This document shows, one piece after another, positions 44,294-57,979 of a stretch of 64,000 nucleotides of DNA. The notes below the pieces were generated by a model. The model was given only the letters and a program-made list of their open reading frames with translations. It searched no databases and was not told where the DNA came from. This DNA is from Vitrella brassicaformis CCMP3155 (Eukaryota > Protista > Chromerida), in assembly GCA_001179505.1 (NCBI GenBank), contig CDMY01000405.1, forward strand, positions 310,001-374,000. The letters are read 5' to 3'. How positions within the stretch are numbered: position 1 is the stretch's first letter; every line of letters starts with the position of its first letter. A program made the position numbers and the translations under genes.

Positions 44294-47200
44294 TCAGAAG
44301 ATGAGCTCCAGCGGCCCCTCCAGCACAATGCCTTCGTCTCTGACATCCTGCACAAACACGTCCTGCAGCCGACCCTCCACCGACATGCCGCCCACGTACC
44401 ACAGCCCCGCACCCTCACGACCATCGCCCCTCATCACACTCACGGTTGGCCCATCGGGCTGCGGCTGCTGCGTGCCGTCCATGGGCGCGGCGTTGCCTGG
44501 TGAGTCGTCGTCGATGACGACCACCTCGGGCGCTGCTGCTGCTGCTGAGGGTGGGCGGGGAGGTGCCACAAAGGGGAGGGAGGGGATGGCTGTCCATGGG
44601 CTGTCGCTGCGGGACTGGCCTTCTAACAACCTAAAGGAGAGAGGGGGAGAGGTAGATATGAATGGGCTCAGCTCAGCTCAGCTCAGCTTACTGCTGTCTG
44701 ACGGCGTCGAGCACGACGTTGGATAGCTTGGCTTTGAAGGGCGGCTTGAGCATCATGGTCACGTGCGGCACACGACCAGCCAACACGGGCAGCCCATCCA
44801 CACTCTGACCCTCACCACCACCGCCACCGCCACCTGCACCAGCCGGAGCAGCGGCAGCAGCAGCAGCAGCAGCGGCAGCAGCGGCAGGTGCCTGAGCTCC
44901 ACTGTCCCCCTCAGCGGCGTTTTGTTCGTCGACATCCATGGCGTCGTTGCCAGCCACACTCGGGGGTGGGGAGGGGGAGGGCGACCTGCGGGGGAGGGGG
45001 CCGTTGTTGTTGAATATGGGGTCGGACGGCATGCTGATGGGGTACAGGAGGCCCTCGGGCTCCACTGCCGCCACCACGAGCATGTCGGTGGCCAGGATGA
45101 GGTGCGTGACACGGAGGGGGTAGACCTGACCCTGCACACACACATAGCATACATCGAATAGAGCGAGGGAGTATTGTATTCGGTGCATCCATCTCTTGCT
45201 GTGTGTTGTCTTGTGTTGTGTGCTTGTGGGTGCTGACTGACCCTCTTGTCCTTTGCTGTCTGCAGCGCATGGCTGTCGGCGTATCGCCTCGAGCAACCGA
45301 AGAAGAATGTCGTCATGTGCAGCGACGGAACCCAGTTGAAACCCTGCAAACAAGCAAAGCAACACACGGACGGATGCATTGAGTTGAGCAGCATTACCAT
45401 TGAGAAAAACCACTTCCACATCAACCTAACCTCTCTCCCCTCTCCCAGAGGGCAGGCAGGCTACCTGCAGCATTTGGCTGCCGTCGATGGCCAAGTGTGG
45501 AAATGCCCTCTCCATCCGCCTCACGAGCGTCCGCACGGCGTTGTCCAGCACGCCGCGGCAGCCTATCAGGTCGATGCCTGCATACACCGGCACGGAGGGC
45601 GGCGGCGGGGCGGGCGCCAGGGAGGGGAAGAGGGCCCCGGAGGGGTCGGAGGCGATGGCGCGGTCGGCATCGTCATAGATGGTCCGGAGGGAGGCGACCA
45701 TCTTGCCGTAGTTGACGTCGACCTGCATGGGCGAAGGACGGAGGCAGATAGATGAGTGTAATTAAGGGGAATTAATTGAGGCAGGCTGCGTTTACTTGTG
45801 TTTTGATGAGCTCTGGGGTGTCGGGAGACCGCTGGGTGGTCAGCATGTGGTTTATCGACTCGTAAATGGTCATGTTCTGCACACACACCACACCGAACAC
45901 ACACATATGCACATTCCCACACGGCGGCTATTTCTTTCTCCGTACCTTTGGGTTGTCCTCAAAGGGTCTGAAGTCGACCAGCGCCTCCCTCACCAGCCGC
46001 CGGACATTCCCCCACCACTCATCGCCCTCACCCTCACCCTCACCCACCCCCTCGCCCACACCCACACCCACGCCACCATCGCCCCGCATCCATCGGGGCT
46101 GCGACGTGTCGACGGCCACCACCCTGTCGATGCCATCTCGCTGCATGGCCCGCTGCGACATGTCAGTGTACCCCCGGTAGAGGGAGAAGAACGACAGGAC
46201 GATGTGCACTCCCCGCGGGCCCGCCAGGGTGGGGTGGTCGGTGCGGGAGACCACACGCGCCAGGCCCTCGATGAGGGTGTCGAGGGCCCATGGGAAGGGC
46301 CAGGGGCCGTGCTGCGCCAGGAGCTGGTCGAACGAGCCAGGGGAAGGGACCCGGCAACCTGGGAAAAGAAGAGATGGATATGTGCACTACATCCTGAATG
46401 ACTCGCTTCTTCTCTTCCTCACCTGCCGGGATTTCCCCAACAGCCCCGGTCTGTGTGGCGTTCGGTGGCAGGATGAGCATGGCCACCACCAGATTGACTC
46501 GGGGCACCACCACGCCCTCACTCTCACCCTGACCCTGACCCTCACCCACCGCCCCCTCGCCATTCCTCTCCTCCTTCTCCCTTCGCCGCGCGTCGCTCTC
46601 CAGCTGCCGGTTCAGCCTGCCCACAAGAGTCCTCAGGTACGACGCCTGCCTCGCTATCGCACTGGGCGGGTGGTTCTTATCGACGATCAGCGCCACACGG
46701 CCGCCAGGGGGGAGAGTCCACGACGGCTGGCCAGGGCCGCTACTCCCCGGCCGCTGTGGCTTAGCCTCCGGCAGGTTGGGCCGCATCTTGCCGCCCTCGT
46801 ATGTGTTGGCTGCCGCTGGTAGTGGCATGGAGCCGTTTGGCTGTGGCTGCAGTGGTGGGAGGCCGATGAGCGTGCGCAGGACGTTGCTGGCCTCTACGTC
46901 GGCCTGGACCATGTCTTGCTGGATCTGCTCTGAGAGGTAGCCGTCGGGCGGGGACGGCAAGATGGCCGGCCGCAGCTGGTCGAAGAAACGCTCCACGGCA
47001 GTGTTGAGCCGCTGGGAGCCTGGAAAGACACACACACACGGAGGGAAAGGGGGGAGAGAGAGACGAGGAGAGGAGATCAGGTAGGTGATGGGAGCCACCC
47101 AGCCAGCCACCCACCTGTGGATGCTGCTTGTTTGAAGGTTGGCTGAGGCACATCGGCCATCGGGTTGTAACCACGCTCACGCAACGCCTGACACACAAGA

Positions 47201-48329
47201 ATATGCAGTGCAATTGAAGAGCCTCCCTGCCTCCCTGCCTGGCTGTATCCCTGTGTAGTACCTTGGCAGTGAACTCATCGGAGGACGCATAGAATAGACA
47301 GTCGCACAACGAGCCCTCCGGCCGCTCCCCGCCCTCCGGCGGCATCAATAGCACCTCTGAAAAGAAGACACAGAGGAGCAAAACACACACACATCCCCAC
47401 TCAGTAGCGAGATGGACAGCAGAATCCCCCCCTCTCCCTCCCCCTCCGGACCTGGCCCCCCGGTGGTATTGTCCCTCTGCAGCATGCGCGACGTTTCGTT
47501 GACCCATCTCTGCAGCAGTGTCGACTTGCCCGACCCGGGAAAGCCCACGGGAAACAGCGCCAGGACCGTCGCCGCACACTCATACTTGGCAGGGGAGGGG
47601 GCGTACGGGGCCAGTGAGGGGGGCGGGGGCGGCGCATTGCTCGCCAGCCGCTCCCGGAGGGCCGACGCGGCTCTGCTGATCACCTGCAGACACACAACAT
47701 GGGAAGGTGTTTGTTGCGGGTTGGTTCTGTCAGTCAGTCACTGCCTCACCCACCCCACCTGAATGGCGTCGTCCCCCTCTTGTCCCTCCTTGGGCACCCC
47801 CGAGAGTGCGACACAGCAAGGCCACATGCTGGCGGCCTCCTCGGCCAGCTCCCGCCACTTGTCGAGCATCACCCCCGCCATCGCCCGCTGGTTCACCACC
47901 ACGTCCGTCTCGCCGTTCCACTGCACAGGCGGCTCCACACGGCCCGCCACGTCGCCCACAGAGGGTCGGGCGGCGGTGTCCGTCATGGCCGTGGGTGATG
48001 TGGCTGTGGCTGTGGCGTGCTGCAGCCGCCTGAGGGACTCCTGCACGCCCTGTATGTCATATCCCCAGAAGACGTTGACGATGTGCCGGTCCCGGAGGGC
48101 GGCGATGCGGTCGTCGTCCTTGTTGGTTTTGCCTCTGCCGCCCCTGTTGCTGTTGACGTCGGTGTTGAGCTTGAGGGCGCTGTCGATGGTCTTGGGGATG
48201 TGATTCATGTGCAGCGCGTCCCACCCCGTGGACACACGGCTGTGCACGCCCTGCACCACACGATTGGAAAAGGGCTCCAGCGAATCTGCACACACATACA
48301 CACACACACACACACACGCACACACGCAC

Positions 48330-48361
<32 letters not shown>

Positions 48362-48784
48362 TTGTGTGCTGGTGGGTCACTTGGCTCACCGCCTCTCTGG
48401 TCGGGTGCCTTTTCATGTGGCGGAAGCGTGAGTGTCTCCTTGAGCTTGGCGACCAGCCCCACGGGCAGCAGCAGTGGCGGGCAGATGATGTTGACGCACA
48501 CGCCCCTGCCGGCCCTGGGCCCCTCCCCTCCTCGGTGCATCTGTTTGACGGCCTCTGCGTTGCCCTTGACCATCTGCATGAAGTCGAGGAACCGGTTGTC
48601 CACCTCGTCCACGTCCATCTGCCGCCAATGGCCCTCCACATGCCTGTGGAGGCGGGAAGGACAGGAGTGACAAACAAACGTGATTAACTGATCTCTCTCT
48701 CTCTCTCTCTCTTTCTCACCTGACACACATCTCATAGAGTGTCTCAAACTCCTCCCGGCTCCCCTCGCCCCCGGCACCACCCTC

Positions 48785-48820
<36 letters not shown>

Positions 48821-49497
48821 CCGTGCCCTAAGCATGGGCTCCCACTGCTGCATGTCGCCCCTGAACGAGTCCACCTCCTCAGCACACAGGTCCCGCAGCC
48901 GCCCCCCGTTGCCGGCCACGCTCTTGGCCTTTGGGATGAACCTCTTGAGCCGCTCGCGCATCCGCCGTAGAATGCGGTAGTCGACCGACTTGAACTTGCC
49001 GATGCCAAGGACAGACTGAGAGGGTTGGGGGCGGGAGGGGGGAGGGACGGCGACGAGGTAGATGACGACGCCTTCCCCGACGGAGGCCAGGGGGCTGGCC
49101 TCCACGTTGTCGCGCAGCGCCTCGATCATCGACATCAGCTGCCACGACGACCGGACGGTCTCCCCCACCTGACAAACACACACACACACACACACAGCAC
49201 CAGGTATTGTCACTCCTCGTTCGGCTCTCCCCTCCCCTCTGCATGGCATCAACGCACCCACCTGTTTGCAGCCGACTGCATTGAGTCCGTGGTTCTTGAG
49301 CATGGCCTGCGTCTTCTGCGGCGGCCAGCACTGCTCGACGCCGTCTGAGGGCACGGCAGCGTACCAGACCAGGCCGAGAGTGTCGTAGGCCACGAGATGC
49401 TGCCGCTCAGACACACCCACCAGCTCCCCTATCAATGTGGCCGACGACAGGTCGCTCTTCAGACATGACAGCTGCACAGACAGACAGAGAGGGGGCG

Positions 49498-49528
<31 letters not shown>

Positions 49529-50626
49529 GTCGCCATCAAGCATACCTGCCGTGCGTCGAGTCGTTCAATGTCTGCAAACCAGGCCTGGGCGATCTTGCGG
49601 GCGAAGCCGTAGCGCTGCTCGCTGTACTGGGGCGAGAATATGTCGGTGCGGCCCCGGGCAAGCAGCGCCACGTTCTTGGAGGCGATCACCCACGCCTCAA
49701 GCACCGTCGAATAAGACACCTGCACACACACACACACACACACACATATATGTGCTGCAGTGACTGAACCTGCGTGTGTCTTCTTGTTTCTGACCTGGGC
49801 GTTCTCTCCGTTGGCTTTGTCTAGCTGAAACAGCTGCAGTTGCCACCCCGCCCTGAGTGCCTCGGTGATCCTCACGGCCCACTGTGCTGCGATCTTCTCC
49901 GCCTGCCCCTGTGCGGGCGGCATGGCCGTCACATCGGCCATGGCGCTGCATTGGGAGAGGTAACTCGACAGCAGGGACGTGTTGACGTCGAAGAACTTCG
50001 GGAGACCTCTGTGGGCCGGGCGGCAGACAGACAGACAGACAGACAGGCAGACAAGTGCTCAGTGGTGCGATGGACGATGTGTGAGAGGATGTACACGTGT
50101 CTGGTCTCATCTCCCACATGTACCTACCTCCTGATTATCTGGGGTTCCCCGTCGGCATTCCGCAACAGCGAGCACCCACGACGCAGTACAAACTGCATGC
50201 ACACACACCACACAACCGCAGACAGTCGCATCCCTCACCGCGTTTTTGCCCATTTGCCCGTTGGTCACCCACCTGTAGTTCCTGATCTTCGGCGTAGAGG
50301 TCATTCTCGCCCGCTTTAGACTTGATGGACACGTCGCAGACCTTCCACCCCTCGCCCGCCACGGGCACGCCTCGCTGCACCACCGACACGGCACTGCCCC
50401 GACGTTGCACCCACTGCCACAGATCACGGCCCGTAGAGGCCACAGATCCAACTTGGTTGGACCGAAGGGCGGTGGTCATGACGGTGATCGGACGGCTGGT
50501 GGTCAGCAGGGTGTGGGAGCGGGAGGAGGGTGGAAATGGGGTGAGGGAGAAGGCCGATGTGAGGCTGATGGTTGATCTGCTGATGGCGAGTATCGTGACG
50601 ATGTGGATGCATGCAGGACCGCACAT
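44294..50626 (-). CDS. Trl1-type trifunctional RNA ligase: adenylyltransferase + P-loop polynucleotide kinase + 2H cyclic phosphodiesterase, with bipartite leader
   Basis: All exons splice in frame. Ligase: RRG..RRGLPKFFDVN, motif I DKANGE, TLIGE, EGVV, GKFK. Kinase: GFPGSGKST, SSDE, IVDKNH, HPTL. 2H motifs LHMTT and PHVTM; C terminus LEGPLELIF*. Confidence 0.85.
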
Positions 50627-51142
50627 CCAGCCCCTACTGATCTGAAGGGGTCAGGTTTTCCTGCTTTTCAAGCTCGCATGATCGCGGCAAACCGTTGTTG
50701 AGTGCCTTCTTGGGGCAGAGTGGGTGACGAGGTGCAGAGGATGGCTGTGCGACCGCGGGAGGAAAGACAGGCTGTTTTGTCCTTTGTGTTGTCGTGCGTG
50801 TGTGCAGTGCAGTGCAGTGAAGACAGTCACGAAATGCAGAAGAGTCGGAAACCTGGATGGATGGATGGATCAATCGGTCGATTGTGTCCGTGACACACAC
50901 ACACACTCCCTCTCCCGCTGCACTGTGGTGCGATCAGGCATCATCCATCATGCATCAGTCACAGCAGGTTGTCTCCCTCCCGTCACAGACACGCAGACAC
51001 GGCGCAGACGTGCGAACGAACGCCAATAAAACCGTTACGATGTTCTCCTCTCTCTCTGCACAACAAAGACATGGTCACTCACGGCATGCAATTGACCGAC
51101 CAGCCAGCCAACGATGCTTCTCCTCTCTGCCTGATCGATCGA

Positions 51143-54100
51143 TCATGTCAGCTGCTGCTGTTGTTGCTGTATGTGCTGGAGCAGCCTCTCCTGGAGGTCG
51201 GCCTTCTTGCCGCTCAGCCGCAGCCCCATCTCTCGGCAGCACTCCTTCAGCTCGTTCACACGCATACCAGATATCATCTCCGCCGTCAGCTCAACGACAC
51301 CACCACCCTCATCTCCCTCCCCCTCCCCCTCCCCCTCATCCACCTCGTCAATGTCAACAATCTCGTGCTCCACCATCTCCACCAGGTCGCGCATCGTCGT
51401 CTGGCCGCGGACGCCGCCGCCGTACCCGTCATATGCCATCCCGCCGGTGTCGTCATCCTGCGTCATGAGAAAACCTAAGAACTCCTTCCTCTCCATGTCG
51501 GACATGCTGTCGCCCTCCCCTGCCGACGACGGCCCCGCCACGGAAAAGCTGTCCGCGCTGTCGGTGCTCCCCATCCTCTCGCGAATGAGGTTGATGAGCA
51601 CCTCCCTTAGCAGCTCCTGCCTTGCGGCGCGGCCCCCCTCGGTGGGCATGTCGAAGTCGGAGAGGTAGGCGTCCAGCTCAGGATCGCTCAGGGCGGGCAG
51701 CGAGTCCAGCACCTCGATCGCCAAACCGACGTCGTCATCATCGCCACCGTACATGCCGCCCTCACCACCACTATCATACGCACCCTCATCGTCTGTGGCC
51801 GGTGGTGCGGGCGGTGGCGGGGCCTCCTGCGTCTGCTGTCGCTGGTGGGACATCCTGAGAGCGGACCTGGCGCGGCTGAGGAAGCGACTTTTGTGTGTGG
51901 ACAATGGGCTGGCCGGGAGGAGCGGTGAGGGGAGGGTAGGGAGGGATGGGGGCGAGGGGTCGTCATTGTCGTCCGTGAGAGGGGTGGGGGCGAAGATGGG
52001 CTTGTTGTCCGCTGTGTCCGGAGCGCTGCTGTCCAGCCAGTGCCTCAGCTCAGCCAAATCAGCCTCCCGCACTGAGTGTGCAGCACGACACACAAAGGAA
52101 TGAGTCACACGGACGTGAAAGCGTCCACCGGGCTCTTCCGTGTACCTGCTCCACTGTCTCCCTCCAAGTCCTCCTCGTCGATAAAGAATCTGGCCTGTCC
52201 GTCTGTCGTCGCACCCCTCCTGCTGAACGGGGCGCTGAAGCCCATCTCATCCTCGAGCGATGCCGGGAAGGGGCTGTCGGTGGAACCACCGAACGGGGCA
52301 GGATCGACATACCTTGGCTCCTCGGAATCATCTTCCTTCTCGGCACCTCGCACCTCTGAGCGGCAAAAGGCAAAACATTCATCCGTTCTGTTGCAGTATA
52401 GATGCGTGTGTGCCTGCCTGGACTGACCGTATTGCGTGTCGTCCGATGAAGGTGCCGGTGGGTGAGGCTCCCAGCCGTTGACAACGGGGCCACTACTCCG
52501 TCCCGTCTGCAGTGCGCTAATATCGGTGTCTGAGCCAAAGGGGCTGCTGTCATCCCTTTCTCCCTCGCCCCCGCCCCCCAGTTCCCACTGCAGCTTGGCC
52601 TGGAAGCCGCCCCTGCCCGCGTCGATGCGGCCGACGCCCAGCTTGCTGGCGCCGATGTTGCCTGACAGCTCGGCGTAGTGTATCGCCTCGTCCAGGTTGG
52701 TGATGGGGCGGAAGGTGCGCCAGTCGACCACCAAACCTTCGTGCTTGCACCACTGATAAACGCACCACGGCGCGGCACACACATGTCCAGGAAGGGGGAG
52801 TGGTATGGTCAATGGTCATGTGGCTGTGCTGTGGCTCACTTGGATGTAGCTGTCATAGTGCGGGTCGGCGGTAAGCGTGCGGGGGTCCCCAAACACTACC
52901 AGACCCCTGACAAAGATGTCCACACAGAGCAGAGGAGGTTGGGTGGCCCGTGGTTCCCCTGCTACTGGTGCGCCCTGCCTGAGTGGCTGGCTGACCTTCT
53001 GGCTCGTGTGACGGCGACGTTGAGTCTCCGCCAGTCGCGCAGGAAGCCCACACTGCCGGTGGGGTTCGACCTCACGGCCGAGAACAGGATCACCTCCTTC
53101 TCGCGACCCTGGTAACCGTCAACCGACTTCACCTGAATGCGGCCATCCATCCCCACATCAAGACATGACACACACAGCCCGTGTGCCTCTGCCCGCAGTG
53201 GTGCGTTGGTGTGTGGCGAGATAGGTGTAGGTACCTACCTCTATCAGCGCGGCTGTGTCTCTGCCCAGCTCAGTGCGGAGGGTGTCCTGCAGGAACCGCA
53301 CCTGCACCAAATTGATGCAGACGTCCATCCACACACACACATCGAGACGATGCACAGGCAGGCCGGCAGAGAGGCATGGTTGGCCAGCTTAGGGGCTGAG
53401 TTGAGGCCGTCACCTGACCTGAGCTGCGTATGGGGTGACGACGCCGATGTCAGTGTACGACACATCGCCATGCGACACCAGCTCTGGACACACACAGAGA
53501 GAGACGGAGAGAGGGAGAGAGAGAAAGATGTATGTACATCACGTGCAGGTGTGTGGTGTGGTGTGGTGTGGTGTGTGGCCCCGGGCCGCCCCCCACTGGT
53601 GCACCTTTGAGCACTTTGACGAGGCACAGTGCCTCCTCCCGGTTGTATTTGCTGGTGGTGCTGCCGCCCCACTTGGTGGTCTCGTCAGGCCTGCTCTCAG
53701 AATAACCCGCCGGCTCCATCACCGACACAAACGCAACCGGCTTCACACTACACACACACACACACAAGACACACACAGACACGAGACAGATCAAGGGAGC
53801 CACATCATGATCATCGTTCCGTTGTGTGGTGCCTGCCTGCCTCACTCACTCGTCGGGCCATGGGAATCCCCCGGGTGTGGGTCTCTCCTCCGGTTTGGGT
53901 ATGGAGATGAGTCGGTCGTCGTAGAACTCAAAGGATGGGAACATGGCGATGGCGGGGTGCATGCGGTACTGGGCCGCCAGCATCACCGGAACCACACCCG
54001 CCAGCACCAAACGGGAAAACAGAGACAAATTCAGACCCTCAGCCTTAGCCTGCAGACAGAAAGGGGTGAAAGAACAAACAGGTCTCTCTCTCTGTGTGTG

Positions 54101-54401
54101 TGTAGGTGGGTACCTTGTCGCTGACGACGGTTGCGGGCAGTTGGTTCTGGTCGCCGACGAGAATGAGCTGCTCGCAGCCCTTGACCATCGGCACCGACGC
54201 CGCCGGCTCCGTCACCTGGGACGCCTCGTCTATCAGCACTGTCGAGAACTTGACTGGCACCCTGCAAACAACACAACACGACACACCACACAGCGGTCCC
54301 TAGAGGCGCTTGTGTGTGGAGTGAGTGGTGGGTGAGTGACCTTTGTGTGTCCCATTCGGGCACTTGGGTGGTGGATGTCAGGCCTGGCTGACCCGCACCT
54401 G

Positions 54402-54435
<34 letters not shown>

Positions 54436-54805
54436 CACGTGGCTGTCCTCTGTGTAGGCCGGCACAATGGTGTGTAGGCGTCTGGGTGGCTCACTGATGG
54501 CAGAAGTGACGACCACATCGGCTTTGGTGACGATGTCGTATATCGCCCGCTGCTCAGCCACCTTGACGTCCTCCTCTGCCAGGCGCAACAGACGGTTCGC
54601 CTCGTCCAGCTGCACACATGTACCCACACATCGACGGCCGACCAATAGATGACACACCCAAGCAGATGCACACATGTGGTGGTGTACCTTGGCCTGGCTG
54701 GCAGCCTTGTCCTCGTCACTGGTGTCGTCCTGGTGGGCCCTGTAGAGCTGCTGCCGCCTCTGCCTGGCCTCCCTCTCATGCGCCAGCGCAGCACGGTACT
54801 GACAC

Positions 54806-54836
<31 letters not shown>

Positions 54837-57800
54837 AGTGCACCTGTGTGTGGTGGGGCGTGTGCACTGCATCTGTGGACTCACCTCTGGGTGCTGGTCG
54901 ACCATAGCGTCCACAGTGTAGTTCTTGAGTGCGGGGTTGACCACGAGCGCACGGCCAGAGCGGACCGCCTTGACGCCCATCTTAATGAGGCCCTCCAGCA
55001 GGTTGTCAGCAGCCACGTTCGAGAAGGCAGCGGCAAGCACCTTCTCGATCCGAGGAGGGGGCCCCGTGGCACTTAGAGCGGCGGGGAGGTCGCCGCAGGG
55101 CTGGATGCCCTGCGCACGGGCGGCCTTCATGAGGGCTACGATGGAGCCGAGGAGCAGGCATGAGGTCCGCGTCTTGCCGGTCCCTGGGGGGCCTTGGATC
55201 AACGTCACACGCTGGGTCAGCGACTGAACGCCACACATACACACAGGGAGAGGTACACATGATGGTCATGTGTGATGTGCATCAGCCATAGCCATCCCCA
55301 ACCCCTCGTCTGTGTGTGGTATCTGTGGGGAGCGTACGCGTCGGACGGCTTCTTCTTGTGACTGGTCGACCAGCCCCTGCCGCTTGGCCATGTCCAGGAT
55401 GGCGTCCAGCCGCTCGGCCGAATACCACCACCTGTTGGCAGGCTGGCTGAACCACTCGTTCCACGGGGCAGGATCGTCTCCCCGCCGGAATACCGCGTAG
55501 AAATCCGTGCTCGCATCCTCACCTGAACGGCACACACACACGTGCTGTGTCTGTGTTCGTGTGGTGGGCGGGGTGGTGGGTATGCTGGCGAGTGCACTTA
55601 CCGACTCCCATTTTGTGTTTGATGACGGTTTGGATGAAGCTGTAGACGAGTGCGTCGCGGAGGTCGGGGGCCATCTTGTCGCTCACGTTGGGCGCCGTCA
55701 GCTCCGCCAGCGCCGTGATCATCCGGTCGTGAGAGACGCGGTTCTCGAACATGTCGAGCCGCCATGACACCGTCCTGTTGTTGTTGTTGTTGTTGTCGTC
55801 AATGTCCTCCTGTCCTTGTGTATCATCATCCTGGCCGAGCTCATCTTCCTCGACTGTGTCTGCAGTGTCTGCGTCGGCAGGTCTGAAGAGTTTCCTCTCC
55901 GCCGGGTCTTGGTCGTCTGGATCCTGCTGCTGCTGCTGCTTGTTGGGGATGCGGTTCTTCTTCCAGAGCTCTGGGGGCAGGTCCATCACAGCCTGAAAGA
56001 GGAGAGAGAAAGATGTCGGTGGTCGGTGAGTGAGTGGGCGATAGATCGGTGGCGCCCGCCTCCTTACGATGTCGATGTACTTGGGGTGCTTCTCGTGCAC
56101 GACGCCCTCGTAACGGTCCATCCTGCAGCGCAGCCACAAGGACACAGACACACCGCACATCCATGCAGCTCTCGGCCATCGATCCAGCTGCTTGCTTACG
56201 CGTCTAGAGGGTTCTGCTCGCCCAGTGTGAGAGTCACGGCATCCCCCCTGCTGAACTGGTGGAAGGGCAGATAAGGCCGCCGATACACCAACCTCGACTC
56301 AACCTGCTGACCGTCACCCTCCTCGCCATCAACATCACCATCCTTATCGCCGCCGGCGTCAGTGCTGTTCCTCCTGACGGTCTCAATGGGCAGCTGCAGC
56401 CTCACGATTTTTTCCTTGAGAATGCGATGTGTGTGTTTGGCCTCCAGGCCCCTGATGAGGATGCCCTCCGACTCCAGCCGGGCGTTGGTCCAGTTGCGCA
56501 GCCGCTCCACCGCCATCTCGTCCTTGACCAGCACCTCCTCTTCAAGCAGAGACGAGAAGTGGTCGGAATAATCCACCAGATGCGGGTAAGCCGCGGGATC
56601 CACGCCCTCGACTGAGTGGGCCCGCTGCGCACACACACACACGCGCACAGACACACGTGTGTCAGCCACCTTTGCTCATCTGTATCTGTTGTGTGTGTGT
56701 GGTGGCTGACCATCCAGAAGGTGGTGTTAGTGTCCTGGAGCATGTTTGGAACATTGCCTTTGATGCGCTCGAGTCCGCTCTCCCTGGCGAGGACGTCGCT
56801 GAGGGCGGCGAACCGCCGCTCCCACTGGGCCGAGCTGAGACCCATCTCCTTGCGACGCTTCTGCCGAAGCTCCTGCCACCGATCCCTGATCGAACAATCA
56901 AACACACACTTGGTGCATTCATTCATCAGGTCAGGTCGTCTACTTGTTTCCCACTCGTCCGTCCACGCTCACCAGGCTTCCATTTCGAGAAGTTCGCTCT
57001 TCTTTGCGTCTTCGAGCGCCTGCACGTCGATGCGATTGAAATCTGAGCCCTTTTTGAACTGGCTCATGACTGCCTGCAGGTAGGTCTGCGGCCTGGCCTC
57101 CCGGGGAGCGCTCCTGTCCCTCTTGGACTTAGACTTCCGCCGCCAGCCGTACTTGGACTCGAGGATCTCCTCTCCCCGCCGGCCCCACCGCCGATCCAGG
57201 CGAACCTGTACCATACAAGCGCATGGATGCACTCAATGCGGGTGTCTTCGTGCTGTGTGTCTAGCATCCATGTACCTGTTCCCACTTGGTGTGGTTCCTC
57301 TCCATCTCAAAGTACTTCTCCAGCCGCCGCCGCTCCCTCTCAAAGGCGCGCCGCTCGTCTGGCGACACATCATCCACCTCTGGCTCATAGTCACTCATGG
57401 CACGGTCAACGGGGTCAGTCAACAACCTCTCACGATCTGCACACACAGCCAGACAGCCAGACAGCCAGACAGCCACAACAATACGACTTGATGCGCCGGG
57501 CTGTGCTGGACGTGGCCTCGGTCACTCACCTTCTGGTGTGATGGTTTCGAGGAGTGCGTCGCGTTGCCTCTGTCTGAACTCCCTCTTGTCGCGCCGCCTC
57601 CTGTCCAGCATGGCGGCGTGCTCCTCCTCCAGCCTGGGCAGGATCGACGATGCTGACCCAACACGCACACGCACACGACGGGACGCTGGCTGCCGATGCC
57701 GCACAGACACAGACGCAGGCACAGACAGAGATGAAGGCGACAAAGGGCCTGACACACACAGAGAGGGGCAATGAGTGGCAATCAGGCCAGCGCGTCACCG

Positions 57801-57979
57801 ATGGATGGATCAATCAAGGATCTTCGTCAACACACACCTCACCTACCGGGCAGCACAGGTGACCCAGTAAAGCCGCTCCTCCTCAGCAACAGCCGATGAG
57901 CGTCCGCAACTCGCGCAAAGATGGCAAACACGGCAAGCGAGATGAGGTTGACCAGAGCGGTTCTCCGCCACCGCCACAT
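51143..57979 (-). CDS. Upf1/DNA2-NAM7-like superfamily 1 helicase with C-terminal SAP domain and bipartite leader
   Basis: About 20 exons in frame. [81 protein letters not shown]; [31 protein letters not shown]. No Upf1 CH zinc domain seen. Confidence 0.9.

What the first reader, a model, noticed from the sequence alone, without database searches (positions are those of the whole stretch)
44294..50626. Complete fungal/plant-style Trl1 heal-and-seal RNA ligase with a plastid-type bipartite leader
Seen: ligase (KxNG, GE, EGxV, KxK), P-loop kinase and two-HxT phosphodiesterase in one intact ORF. The leader MCGPACIHIVTILAISRSTISLTSA|FSLTPFPPSSRSHTLLTTSRP has a hydrophobic segment, Phe at +1 after TSA and a Ser/Thr/Arg-rich acid-free stretch, then a second Met (MTTALR). 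Established: Trl1 joins 2',3'-cyclic-phosphate and 5'-OH RNA ends in fungi, plants and trypanosomes, whereas many eukaryotes use RtcB; signal peptide + Phe-initiated transit peptide targets complex red plastids; chromerid plastid mRNAs are heavily processed and poly(U)-tailed. Inference: a dual-start enzyme supplying RNA repair or ligation inside a secondary plastid, which as far as I know is not characterised.
Basis: partly seen in the sequence, partly recalled or inferred. Interest (0 to 1): 0.78.

Follow-up and report, generated by a model that had tools for sequence, protein, structure and literature searches.

The report
Trl1-like RNA repair ligase, plastid-style leader
An alga related to malaria parasites (Vitrella brassicaformis) expresses a single 18-exon gene for a three-in-one RNA "heal-and-seal" ligase of the yeast Trl1 type, and only in this species does it carry a front end that resembles the address label of its chloroplast proteins, though that targeting is untested.

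Summary
The gene is real, but it is not one intact ORF. It is an expressed 18-exon gene on the minus strand (44294-50626) with 17 GT..AG introns and a 1,624-aa product. Most introns are supported by spliced RNA contigs.

The product aligns end to end with an uncharacterised family found in alveolates: ciliates, dinoflagellates, Chromera and coccidia. The catalytic motifs are kept in all three modules: ligase, P-loop kinase and two-HxT phosphodiesterase.

Pfam's Trl1 models do not detect the window's exons. Predicted structures of two relatives do match fungal Trl1. The Chromera ligase domain matches Trl1-LIG, including its special C-domain (Z 22). A ciliate kinase-CPD region matches Trl1 KIN-CPD (E 6e-13).

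The gene is single-copy. The genome also has three RtcB loci and two Tpt1 loci.

The 49-residue leader is inside the mRNA contigs, is coding-like, and is absent from every homologue with a complete N-terminus except one unnamed transcript with a different hydrophobic extension. It closely resembles four LHC presequences of the same genome (hydrophobic segment, Ala at -1, Phe at +1, acid-free Ser/Thr/Pro/Arg stretch). Its signal-peptide part is weaker, and no dedicated predictor or experiment was available.

A chloroplast isoform of tRNA ligase is already known in plants.

Identity: about 0.9. Plastid targeting: about 0.5. The scan noted this same stretch before (s1-218567).

The parts
44294..50626 (-). 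Whole coding region: 18 exons, 4,875 nt CDS, 1,624 aa plus stop
   Evidence: Model built from RNA joints and GT..AG sites; one frame, a single terminal stop
50273..50626 (-). Exon 1 (aa 1-118): leader plus the start of the conserved N-terminal region
   Evidence: Spliced RNA contig X5 rec18 covers 50273-50655 and X6 rec21 covers 50430-50744. Homology to Chromera begins at 50443
50480..50626 (-). Vitrella-specific 49-codon leader (aa 1-49): hydrophobic segment, TSA|F, acid-free Ser/Thr/Pro/Arg stretch
   Evidence: Absent from all homologues aligned. In-frame GC3 is 0.78. Codon score is +12.7 bits against a maximum of 5.4 in 371 intron/intergenic windows. Resembles four LHC leaders
50477..50479 (-). 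Second in-frame ATG (Met50), at about the point where homologues start
   Evidence: Context is G at -3 and A at +4, against T at -3 and T at +4 for ATG1
50668..50679 (-). Three-codon upstream ORF (ATG CGA GCT TGA) 53 nt before ATG1. It lies inside RNA contig X6 rec21 but outside X5 rec18
50128..50192 (-). Exon 2 (aa 119-140)
   Evidence: Intron 1 joint in X5 and X6; the 65 nt fit X5 rec18
49795..50008 (-). Exon 3 (aa 140-211): RRGLPKFF and KANGEN (motif I; Lys204 is the predicted AMP acceptor)
   Evidence: X5 rec18 piece 49793-50008. Family profile hit E 5e-9. Motif coordinates
49546..49719 (-). Exon 4 (aa 212-269): SKNV (motif Ia)
   Evidence: The 174 nt fit X5 rec18. Profile hit E 2.1e-17
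49262..49471 (-). Exon 5 (aa 270-339): IGELVG (motif III) and QHLVAY (candidate motif IIIa His)
   Evidence: X5 rec18 piece 49257-49471. Profile hit E 2.8e-20
48720..49168 (-). Exon 6 (aa 340-489): EGVVIY (motif IV), GKFK (motif V), YRILRRMRE, then a poly-Gln tract
   Evidence: Profile hit E 1.1e-16
48390..48643 (-). Exon 7 (aa 489-574)
   Evidence: tblastn to Chromera
47759..48285 (-). Exon 8 (aa 574-749): linker region
   Evidence: Intron 8 joint in X5 and X6. Acceptor taken from the sequence
47452..47683 (-). Exon 9 (aa 750-827): P-loop GFPGSGKST
   Evidence: Joints on both sides in X5 and X6. P-loop Pfam hits
47262..47356 (-). Exon 10 (aa 827-858): the SSD motif with the family-invariant Asp
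   Evidence: Joints in X5 and X6
47115..47187 (-). Exon 11 (aa 859-883)
   Evidence: Joints in X5 and X6
46423..47019 (-). Exon 12 (aa 883-1082): DKNHPP kinase motif plus long insertions
   Evidence: Joints in X5 and X6
45946..46358 (-). Exon 13 (aa 1082-1219): RVVSRTDH kinase motif
   Evidence: Joints. tblastn to Chromera E 1e-14
45796..45876 (-). Exon 14 (aa 1220-1246)
   Evidence: Joints in X5 and X6
45465..45722 (-). Exon 15 (aa 1247-1332)
   Evidence: Joints in X1, X5 and X6
45242..45343 (-). Exon 16 (aa 1333-1366): first HxT (LHMTT)
   Evidence: Joints. tblastn to Chromera, 50% identity
44692..45131 (-). Exon 17 (aa 1367-1513): low-complexity insert, then the second HxT (PHVTMM)
   Evidence: Intron 16 joint in X6. 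tblastn to dinoflagellate P0021 at 44691-44783
44294..44630 (-). Exon 18 (aa 1513-1624): C-terminal strands of the phosphodiesterase domain, then the stop
   Evidence: GTAAGC..TTTAG intron 17 keeps the frame. The C-terminus aligns with dinoflagellate and ciliate C-termini. Not covered by the laid RNA stretch

Best explanation
This is the single Vitrella brassicaformis gene for a Trl1-like tripartite RNA repair ligase.

Inferred mechanism, by analogy with fungal Trl1:
1. The C-terminal 2H phosphodiesterase (His1341, His1489) opens a 2',3'-cyclic phosphate to give a 3'-OH and 2'-phosphate end.
2. The central P-loop kinase phosphorylates the 5'-OH.
3. The N-terminal ligase is adenylylated on Lys204, activates the 5'-phosphate and seals the break.
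4. The junction keeps a 2'-phosphate, which one of the two Tpt1 enzymes encoded elsewhere in the genome can remove.

The family is old in alveolates and is also present in plastid-less ciliates. Vitrella has added 49 codons in front of the ancestral start. That extension is transcribed, shows coding-type codon periodicity, and has the layout of this alga's plastid presequences: a hydrophobic signal-like segment, Ala at -1, Phe at +1, and an acid-free hydroxylated and basic stretch.

The most likely reading is that translation from ATG 50626 sends the enzyme through the ER into the complex plastid. Initiation at Met50 could also give a leaderless nucleo-cytosolic form, because ATG1 has a weak context and Met50 a better one.

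Shown: gene structure, expression, family membership, motif conservation, fold matches of relatives, and leader features. Inferred: enzyme activity, plastid import, use of both starts, and the substrate.
For: Gene model and expression.

Family and motif conservation.

Fold of the Chromera ligase domain (pLDDT 85):
- Fungal Trl1-LIG is the best match, with Foldseek E 6e-9 to 4e-7.
- VIA Z is 22.0 over 300 residues, reaching residue 407 of 6n67 and so covering the Rnl6 C-domain.
- T4 Rnl1 scores Z 19.5 over the adenylyltransferase part only.

Fold of a ciliate member's kinase-CPD region (pLDDT 88.5):
- Trl1 KIN-CPD 6u05 matches at E 6.3e-13.
- CNPase 2H domains come next.

Pfam on 36 family members: RNA_lig_T4_1 in 5, tRNA_lig_CPD in 3, AAA_33 in 7.

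Motif equivalences come from the published Trl1-LIG structure (PMC6379707): RGxxKFF, KxNG, SKxx, E, H, EGxV, KxK.

Genome context: single copy and two Tpt1 loci.

Leader:
- It lies inside the mRNA contigs.
- An in-frame stop sits 8 codons upstream of ATG1.
- It is coding-like.
- It is absent from the homologues aligned.
- It matches four LHC leaders of the same genome in Ala at -1, Phe at +1, Ser/Thr/Pro/Arg content and lack of acidic residues.
- Chromerid plastid leaders are signal peptide plus transit peptide (PMC6668581).

Plant precedent for a chloroplast isoform: PMC5895719.
Against: - No Pfam Trl1 model reaches threshold on the window's exons or anywhere in the genome. PDB sequence searches with exon pieces found nothing relevant.
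- Both structure predictions were made on relatives (Chromera and a ciliate), not on the window's own protein.
- The leader's hydrophobic core is the weakest of the five compared (KD 2.56 against 2.64-3.46). It has no basic residue before it, and it is separated from the proposed cleavage site by 10 residues that include an Arg.
- No SignalP or ASAFind run was possible.
- The leader is not conserved in Chromera or the named dinoflagellates.
- Phe at +1 is less diagnostic in Vitrella than in Chromera (PMC6668581).
- The same first-stage reading called bipartite leaders on several unrelated genes of this genome, which suggests over-calling.
- Contigs cannot show where transcripts start or which ATG is used.
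Confidence: 0.5

Rival explanations
1. The enzyme is the same Trl1-like heal-and-seal ligase, but it works only in the nucleus and cytosol, as it presumably does in ciliates. The 49 upstream codons are then a little-used or non-targeting extension. Met50 is the main start, and the resemblance to a plastid presequence is coincidental.
For: - Homologues, including plastid-less ciliates, start at about residue 50-68 of the model.
- Met50 has the better initiation context.
- A small uORF precedes ATG1.
- The signal-peptide features are sub-optimal.
- The leader is not conserved.
- The shuffle test for coding periodicity is only p about 0.03-0.05.
Against: - ATG1 is the first in-frame ATG after a stop and lies in spliced mRNA contigs.
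- No intron or intergenic window reaches the leader's codon score.
- The combination of Ala at -1, Phe at +1 and 42 acid-free residues matches the real plastid leaders of this genome.
Confidence: 0.3
2. The leader is translated and does target the protein, but to another compartment: the mitochondrion, the ER or secretory pathway, or a plastid-periphery compartment. It does not reach the plastid stroma.
For: - Acid-free, hydroxylated and Arg-containing N-termini are also typical of mitochondrial presequences.
- The n-region has no charge and the c-region is long.
- According to the title of Englert et al. 2007, as listed in PMC5895719, plant pre-tRNA splicing enzymes go to multiple compartments.
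Against: - The hydrophobic start followed by A|F and a Pro-rich stretch fits the plastid pattern seen in four LHC leaders.
- That shape does not look like an amphipathic mitochondrial helix.
- An RNA ligase has no obvious substrate in the ER lumen.
Confidence: 0.12
3. The protein keeps the three folds but is not a heal-and-seal ligase. One or more modules would then be inactive or repurposed, for example in a small-RNA pathway, as hinted by a ciliate member fused to an RNA-dependent RNA polymerase.
For: - The sequence is very divergent, with several hundred residues of low-complexity insertions.
- The Arg of Trl1 motif IV (EGFVIR) is Tyr in this family.
- A Pseudocohnilembus homologue carries an RdRP core domain.
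- Three RtcB genes could cover tRNA splicing.
Against: All residues that the Trl1 structure paper lists as contacting ATP, metal or the adenylate in motifs I, Ia, III, IV (Glu) and V have counterparts. So do the P-loop Lys, the invariant Asp and both HxT pairs.
Confidence: 0.06

Closest known systems
Fungal tRNA ligase Trl1 (ligase clade Rnl6 + GTP-dependent kinase + 2H cyclic phosphodiesterase)
   Same: - Same domain order: LIG, KIN, CPD.
- Counterparts of RGxxKFF, KxNG, SKxx, motif III Glu, EGxV and KxK, followed by an R..RE stretch.
- Predicted folds of family members match Trl1-LIG, including its C-domain, and Trl1 KIN-CPD best.
   Different: - About twice as long: 1,624 aa here, while the solved fungal pieces are 372-395 residues (LIG) and 413 (KIN-CPD).
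- About 15% identity in the structural alignments.
- Not detected by Pfam's Trl1 models at threshold.
- Motif IV ends in Tyr, not Arg.
- Long low-complexity inserts.
- Phosphate-donor preference of the kinase is unknown.
- Vitrella-specific N-terminal leader.
Plant tRNA ligase (RNL) with its chloroplast isoform
   Same: A tripartite heal-and-seal ligase that is also found in a plastid, besides the nucleus and cytoplasm (PMC5895719 citing Englert et al. 2007 and Nohales et al. 2012). This is the direct precedent for the proposed biology.
   Different: - The plant plastid is primary and needs only a transit peptide. Here a signal-peptide-like segment plus a Phe-initiated transit-like stretch would be needed for a four-membrane red-derived plastid.
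- No plant sequence was retrieved by my searches. The relationship was not tested directly.
Phage T4 Rnl1 with T4 polynucleotide kinase-phosphatase
   Same: The Rnl1-type adenylyltransferase fold is shared (Z about 19.5 over about 252 residues). Both are RNA break repair systems that heal the ends and then seal them.
   Different: T4 uses separate proteins, a 3'-phosphatase instead of a 2H phosphodiesterase, and a different ligase C-domain. The T4 Rnl1 structural match stops at the adenylyltransferase part.
RtcB (3'-phosphate RNA ligase)
   Same: It joins the same kind of broken ends in tRNA splicing and RNA repair. It is present in this genome as three multi-exon loci.
   Different: RtcB is unrelated in fold and chemistry: direct ligation that leaves no 2'-phosphate. 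It is named in the literature as the ligase of Plasmodium (bioRxiv 10.64898/2026.08.16.745097).
Pfam DUF7920 / PF09414 'RNA ligase domain-containing' proteins of ciliates, dinoflagellates, Chromera and coccidia
   Same: This is the actual family of the window's protein. Alignment is full-length, and 62 of 76 strongly conserved columns are identical.
   Different: Those proteins are uncharacterised. With the possible exception of one unnamed transcript (P0153), they lack the hydrophobic N-terminal leader.

Membership tests
Trl1-type tripartite RNA ligase | Covalent nucleotidyltransferase motifs in order: I (KxNG, Lys nucleophile), Ia (SKxx), III (Glu), IIIa (aromatic or His), IV (EGxV), V (KxK) | tested here: met
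   The window has KANGEN 204-209, SKNV 225-228, IGELVG 283-288, QHLVAY 293-298, EGVVIY 371-376 and GKFK 396-399. All are invariant or nearly so in the family. Equivalents are taken from PMC6379707. The motif IV Arg of EGFVIR is Tyr here.
Trl1-type tripartite RNA ligase | [quoted passage not shown] | tested here: met
   RRGLPKFF at aa 139-146 is conserved family-wide. HMMER aligned the family's RRGlpKFFD to ARGYDKFFN of Candida glabrata Trl1 (9qw7).
Trl1-type tripartite RNA ligase | Distinctive all-helical C-domain of the ligase (Rnl6 clade) with the proposed 2'-phosphate-binding R..R-E | tested here: inconclusive
   Tested on the Chromera orthologue only. Its AF2 model aligns to 6n67 up to residue 407 at Z 22.0, whereas T4 Rnl1 aligns only through its adenylyltransferase part. 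In the window, R407, R410 and E411 lie +8, +11 and +12 from Lys399. In Chaetomium Trl1 the offsets are +9, +12 and +13. That is a one-residue shift, inferred from spacing and not from a structure of this protein.
Trl1-type tripartite RNA ligase | Central P-loop polynucleotide 5'-kinase domain | tested here: met
   The window has the P-loop GFPGSGKST plus the family-invariant SSD, DKNHPP and R..R..H motifs. The AF2 model of a ciliate member matches Trl1 KIN-CPD 6u05 (E 6.3e-13) and KIN 6tzo/6tzx. Pfam AAA_33 is found in 7 and tRNA_lig_kinase in 1 of 36 members. The fold was tested by proxy only.
Trl1-type tripartite RNA ligase | C-terminal 2H phosphoesterase with two HxT motifs | tested here: met
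   The window has LHMTT (His1341) and PHVTM (His1489). They align with LHxT and PHxT of the family. The ciliate model matches CNPase catalytic domains (E about 5e-7) and 6u05. The family profile hits goldfish RICH (2i3e, E 0.024). Pfam tRNA_lig_CPD is found in 3 of 36 members.
Trl1-type tripartite RNA ligase | Recognition by the curated Pfam models PF09511, PF08303 and PF08302 at their gathering scores | tested here: not met
   No hit on any exon piece and none in six-frame scans of the whole genome. The controls of those scans did not ring, so they are weak negatives. The joined protein was not scanned. Among relatives, matches were listed at E<=0.01 and only in a minority; the best shown tRNA_lig_CPD match is 22.3 bits against a cut-off of 23.
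Trl1-type tripartite RNA ligase | ATP-dependent sealing that requires a 2'-phosphate, and in vivo function in tRNA or HAC1-type splicing | not testable with these tools
   Needs biochemistry or yeast trl1 complementation.
Bipartite plastid-targeting signal of red-derived complex plastids | Cleavable ER signal peptide at the extreme N-terminus | tested here: inconclusive
   The hydrophobic core is ACIHIVTILAI (KD over 11 residues 2.56, against 2.64-3.46 in four LHC leaders). No basic n-region. Ten residues lie between the core and the proposed cut. No SignalP was available.
Bipartite plastid-targeting signal of red-derived complex plastids | Small residue at -1 and Phe at +1 of the signal cleavage site | tested here: met
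   The window has TSA|FSLTP. Four LHC genes of this genome have A|FVP(S/P/N). Phe is less strictly kept in Vitrella (PMC6668581). The cleavage site itself is assumed, not predicted.
Bipartite plastid-targeting signal of red-derived complex plastids | Transit-peptide-like stretch: hydroxylated, basic, few or no acidic residues | tested here: met
   In the 25 residues after Phe26: Ser+Thr 10, Pro 4, Arg 2, Asp+Glu 0. The first acidic residue is at +43. The LHC controls have Ser+Thr 5-9, Pro 3-4, Arg+Lys 3-4 and Asp+Glu 0-1.
Bipartite plastid-targeting signal of red-derived complex plastids | Leader is part of the mature mRNA and in frame with the enzyme | tested here: met
   Spliced contig X5 rec18 runs from 50655 through exons 1-6, and X6 rec21 reaches 50744. 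There is no stop between ATG1 and Met50. The codon signal is coding-like.
Bipartite plastid-targeting signal of red-derived complex plastids | Leader shared by orthologues of other plastid-bearing relatives | tested here: not met
   Chromera Cvel_23737 and the dinoflagellate homologues start at about model residue 50-68 without a hydrophobic segment. Chromera genomic DNA upstream could not be fetched. One unnamed transcript, P0153, has a hydrophobic extension plus a second Met.
Bipartite plastid-targeting signal of red-derived complex plastids | Demonstrated import into the plastid | not testable with these tools
   Needs reporter fusions or organelle proteomics.

The most novel reading that the evidence does not exclude
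Vitrella has re-addressed its only Trl1-like heal-and-seal RNA ligase to its four-membrane, red-derived plastid by adding a lineage-specific bipartite leader. A second start at Met50 keeps a nucleo-cytosolic form. This would be the first RNA break-repair or RNA-joining system inside a complex plastid. It would also parallel the unexplained chloroplast isoform of plant tRNA ligase. Independently, the family would be a previously undescribed Trl1-like ligase clade in ciliates, dinoflagellates, chromerids and coccidian parasites.
Probability: 0.35. Interest if true: 0.65.

Novelty: new variant of a known kind. Interest (0 to 1): 0.5.

Why it matters
Heal-and-seal (Trl1-type) ligases are usually described as enzymes of fungi, plants and kinetoplastids. 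A recent preprint names RtcB as the tRNA ligase of Plasmodium. This gene belongs to a divergent Trl1-like clade that I found in ciliates, dinoflagellates, chromerids and coccidia (Eimeria, Cyclospora). I found no paper that describes it.

That widens the known distribution of the pathway. It also raises the question of what these cells do with it alongside RtcB.

If the Vitrella leader really is a plastid address, an RNA-joining enzyme works inside a secondary plastid. That would give a second, independent case next to the plant chloroplast isoform. To my knowledge the native role of that isoform is unknown; the papers read here give it only a role in viroid circularisation. It would also make the question testable in an alga related to organisms where transfection tools exist.

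If the leader is not functional, the finding reduces to an ordinary, though unannotated, RNA repair gene.

Tried and rejected
- **Pfam on ten stop-bounded exon pieces.** Only generic P-loop hits.
- **Six-frame genome scans with PF09511, PF08302 and PF08303.** Nothing found, but the control genomes were silent too, so these are uninformative.
- **PDB sequence search with two ligase exon pieces.** Nothing relevant.
- **Family profile against PDB by sequence.** Only a marginal Trl1 hit (9qw7, E 0.0096). For the C-terminal half, mostly generic P-loop proteins.
- **Looking for Vitrella's own annotated protein, to obtain a reference.** It is not in the representative library or the 5.8-billion-protein set.
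- Pfam, PDB, AlphaFold and atlas searches of the joined 1,624-aa model were left out. The joined model was used only inside local scripts for alignment. All tool searches used window references exon by exon, or homologues' ids.
- **Profile search for named fungal or plant relatives.** Returned only ciliate and unnamed proteins.
- **Supplements of Fussy et al. 2019.** No RNA ligase or RtcB entry.
- **Chromera genomic DNA upstream of Cvel_23737.** Not on record.
- **High-depth 'joints' 48016/50853 and 45224/50798.** Rejected as artefacts of a (TGTGGC)n repeat in exon 8 and a (GGAT)n repeat at 50854-50870.

Full report
**Organism and locus.** The window is G000:C405:310001-374000 of a genome of 72,700,666 bases in 1,064 contigs. 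Those figures are exactly the ones published for Vitrella brassicaformis CCMP3155 (PMC4501334). The region is about 60% G+C.

**Observation.** The interval 44294-50626 on the minus strand is not an open reading frame. All three frames are interrupted, and the gaps are rich in (CA)n-type repeats.

I laid four public runs on 44900-50899, which is 6,000 letters as the operators prescribe.
- Run X2 gave unspliced contigs and so is DNA.
- Runs X5, X6 and partly X1 gave contigs that skip short segments ending CT..AC on the plus strand, which is GT..AG for a minus-strand gene.
- The joints define introns 1 and 8-16 directly.
- The piece lengths of contig X5 rec18 fit introns 2-5.
That is what flanking exon sequence across introns 6 and 7 would give.
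- Intron 17 (GTAAGC..TTTAG) lies outside the laid stretch. It is inferred from frame and from homology of the last exon.

The result is an 18-exon CDS of 4,875 nt with one terminal stop, giving 1,624 aa.

**A note on method.** The spliced protein has no reference. Searches were made exon by exon by window reference, or with homologues' ids. The joined model was used only in local scripts for alignment and statistics.

**What the protein is.**
- Pfam sees only a P-loop in the exon pieces. PDB sequence searches see nothing relevant.
- Exon 5, intron 5 and exon 6 form one open frame. An exhaustive phmmer search with that piece found 153 proteins at E<=1e-3, each matching in two stretches that correspond to the two exons.
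- Named members are Chromera velia Cvel_23737 (1,648 aa, 46% identity in this part), Symbiodinium, Prorocentrum/Polarella, Blepharisma, Euplotes, Tetrahymena, Pseudocohnilembus, Stylonychia, Fabrea, Cyclospora and Eimeria. The named hosts therefore span ciliates, dinoflagellates, chromerids and coccidia. All entries are annotated as hypothetical, 'RNA ligase domain-containing' or DUF7920.
- tblastn of the Chromera protein against the window gives colinear hits from 50443 down to 45251. A dinoflagellate protein reaches 44691.
- A profile of the family's ligase region hits four colinear exons here (E 2.8e-20 to 5e-9) and nowhere else in the genome, so the gene is single-copy.
- In a local alignment the model matches the family from about residue 62 to the C-terminus. 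It is identical at 62 of 76 columns that are at least 80% conserved, and the remaining differences are mostly conservative.

**Relation to Trl1.**
- Of 36 long family members, 5 match Pfam RNA_lig_T4_1 (best E 1e-6), 10 match PF09414, 11 match DUF7920, 7 match AAA_33, 3 match tRNA_lig_CPD and 1 matches tRNA_lig_kinase.
- An AlphaFold2 model of the Chromera ligase region (pLDDT 85) finds fungal Trl1 ligase domains first. These are 9qw7, 8rbj, 9r3w, 6n0t and 6n67, with E 6e-9 to 4e-7.
- With VIA-align the Trl1 matches score Z 20-22 over about 300 residues and extend to the end of the Trl1-specific C-domain. T4 Rnl1 scores about 19.5 over about 252 residues confined to the adenylyltransferase part. 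Archaeal Rnl3 scores 16-18.
- A model of a ciliate member's C-terminal half (pLDDT 88.5) finds the Trl1 kinase-phosphodiesterase structure 6u05 first (E 6.3e-13). CNPase 2H domains and Trl1 kinase structures follow.
- The Trl1-LIG structure paper (PMC6379707) lists the residues that contact ATP, metal and adenylate: R..RGxxKFF, motif I Lys, motif Ia SKHS Lys, motif III Glu, motif IIIa His, motif IV EGFVIR and motif V KxK. The window has RRGLPKFF, KANGEN, SKNV, IGELVG, QHLVAY, EGVVIY and GKFK in that order. The one difference is Tyr for the last Arg of motif IV.
- After motif V the window has R407, R410 and E411. This is one residue closer than the R334, R337 and E338 of Chaetomium Trl1 that are proposed to bind the 2'-phosphate. 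That equivalence is an inference from spacing.
- The kinase P-loop, the invariant Asp of SSD, DKNHPP, R..R..H and both HxT pairs are kept.

I conclude with high confidence that this is a divergent Trl1-like heal-and-seal ligase. It fails the curated Pfam thresholds, and the fold tests were made on relatives, not on this protein.

**Pathway context.** The genome has three multi-exon RtcB loci and two Tpt1 (2'-phosphotransferase) loci. The enzyme needed to remove the junction 2'-phosphate therefore exists. An alternative ligase for tRNA splicing exists too. I could not resolve the N-termini of those genes.

**The leader.**
- ATG 50626 is the first in-frame ATG after a stop eight codons upstream.
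- It lies inside a properly spliced RNA contig that starts at 50655, and inside a second contig that reaches 50744. Contigs cannot exclude additional, shorter transcripts.
- Every homologue in the first alignment begins at about model residue 50-68. Homology to Chromera begins at residue 62. The 49 codons are thus an addition in front of the ancestral start, and Met50 sits where the other proteins start.
- The extension has in-frame GC3 of 0.78, against 0.80 for the rest of the CDS. Its codon log-odds are +12.7 bits in frame and negative in both other frames. Shuffles reach the in-frame value in 3-5% of trials. None of 371 windows from this gene's introns and 5' intergenic region reaches it (maximum 5.4). 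It is therefore probably translated sequence, not UTR.

For an internal standard I extracted four light-harvesting-complex genes of the same genome whose N-termini lie in one open frame with the domain. All four show a hydrophobic signal segment, Ala at -1, Phe at +1 (A|FVP...) and 19-31 residues before the first acidic residue.

| Feature | Ligase leader | Four LHC leaders |
|---|---|---|
| Site | TSA\|FSLTP | A\|FVP(S/P/N) |
| Ser+Thr in first 25 after Phe | 10 | 5-9 |
| Pro in first 25 | 4 | 3-4 |
| Arg+Lys in first 25 | 2 | 3-4 |
| Asp+Glu in first 25 | 0 | 0-1 |
| Hydrophobic core (KD, 11 residues) | 2.56 | 2.64-3.46 |
| Residues from core to cut | 10 (includes an Arg) | 2-9 |
| Basic residue before the core | none | present |

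The transit-like part fits well. The signal-like part is the weakest of the five.

The literature confirms that chromerid plastid proteins use signal peptide plus transit peptide, and that Phe is less strict in Vitrella (PMC6668581). ATG1 has T at -3 and T at +4. Met50 has G at -3 and A at +4. A three-codon uORF lies 53 nt upstream. Leaky scanning to Met50 is plausible but untested.

One unnamed dinoflagellate-like transcript of the family (P0153) also has a hydrophobic extension followed by a second Met at the conserved start. Chromera and the named dinoflagellates do not have one.

The first-stage reading has called similar leaders on several unrelated genes of this genome, so I treat the pattern with some caution.

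**Comparison with what is known.** Plants already have a chloroplast isoform of their tRNA ligase, besides the nuclear and cytoplasmic enzyme. It is the enzyme that circularises chloroplast viroids (PMC5895719 citing Englert et al. 2007 and Nohales et al. 2012). The statement that a plastid heal-and-seal ligase is uncharacterised is therefore too strong. What would be new is such an enzyme behind four membranes in a red-derived plastid, and the alveolate clade itself. I found no paper linking Trl1 to ciliates, dinoflagellates, chromerids or coccidia. A recent preprint names RtcB as the ligase of Plasmodium.

**Verdict.**
- The gene is a real, expressed, single-copy, divergent Trl1-like RNA repair ligase (about 0.9).
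- Its Vitrella-specific leader is probably translated and is a credible, but not proven, plastid presequence (about 0.5).
- A nucleo-cytosolic-only enzyme (about 0.3) and another destination (about 0.1) are the main alternatives.
- I class it as a new variant of a known kind and score interest 0.5.

Noticed in passing
G000:C309:99175-101071, C176:151646-153389, C362:32781-35035: Three separate multi-exon RtcB loci in the genome. Their N-termini and compartments were not examined.
   Followed up: partly
L011 (G000:C240:1-2325) and L012 (G000:C369:45482-48739): Two Tpt1 (RNA 2'-phosphotransferase) loci. The C240 copy sits in an ORF with about 100 residues in front of the domain (MRSFPCVFLHLF...). 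Whether either copy carries an organelle leader is unresolved.
   Followed up: partly
L013, L016, L018, L019 (LHC genes on C311, C619, C303, C887): Four light-harvesting genes have single-frame N-termini with signal segment + A|FVP(S/P/N) + acid-poor Ser/Thr/Arg/Pro stretch. They are a useful internal reference set for judging plastid leaders in this genome.
   Followed up: yes
P0153 (EukProt Trinity transcript, organism not given): A dinoflagellate-like family member starts MRRCLSSVCLVSSCCVSFLTFF..., followed by a second Met directly before the conserved start. This is a parallel to the Vitrella two-start layout.
   Followed up: no
P0179 (Pseudocohnilembus persalinus, 2,692 aa): A homologue found with the full-length family profile that carries an RNA-dependent RNA polymerase core domain (PF05183). 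This hints at small-RNA-related roles in ciliates.
   Followed up: no
P0155-P0157 (Cyclospora cayetanensis, Eimeria maxima, E. brunetti): Coccidian parasites have 2.2-2.3 kaa homologues of this Trl1-like ligase. A recent preprint names RtcB as the tRNA ligase of Plasmodium. No KxNG-type motif I (K-[A/S]-[N/D]-G) was found in them by a simple pattern, so they may be divergent or mis-modelled.
   Followed up: partly
window 45099-45264: One RNA contig of run X5 skips 164 nt with GT..AG on the plus strand, which is antisense to the gene. It would shift the frame if it were sense. This is either an antisense spliced transcript or an assembly artefact.
   Followed up: no
window 47999-48016 and 50854-50870: A (TGTGGC)n repeat inside exon 8 and a (GGAT)n repeat upstream of the gene attract many unrelated contigs. 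They create false long-range 'joints' and depth peaks in all runs.
   Followed up: yes
window 51143-57979, minus strand: The co-oriented upstream neighbour ends about 500 nt before this gene's ATG. Other first-stage notes describe it as a UPF1-like helicase with a similar leader. I did not examine it.
   Followed up: no
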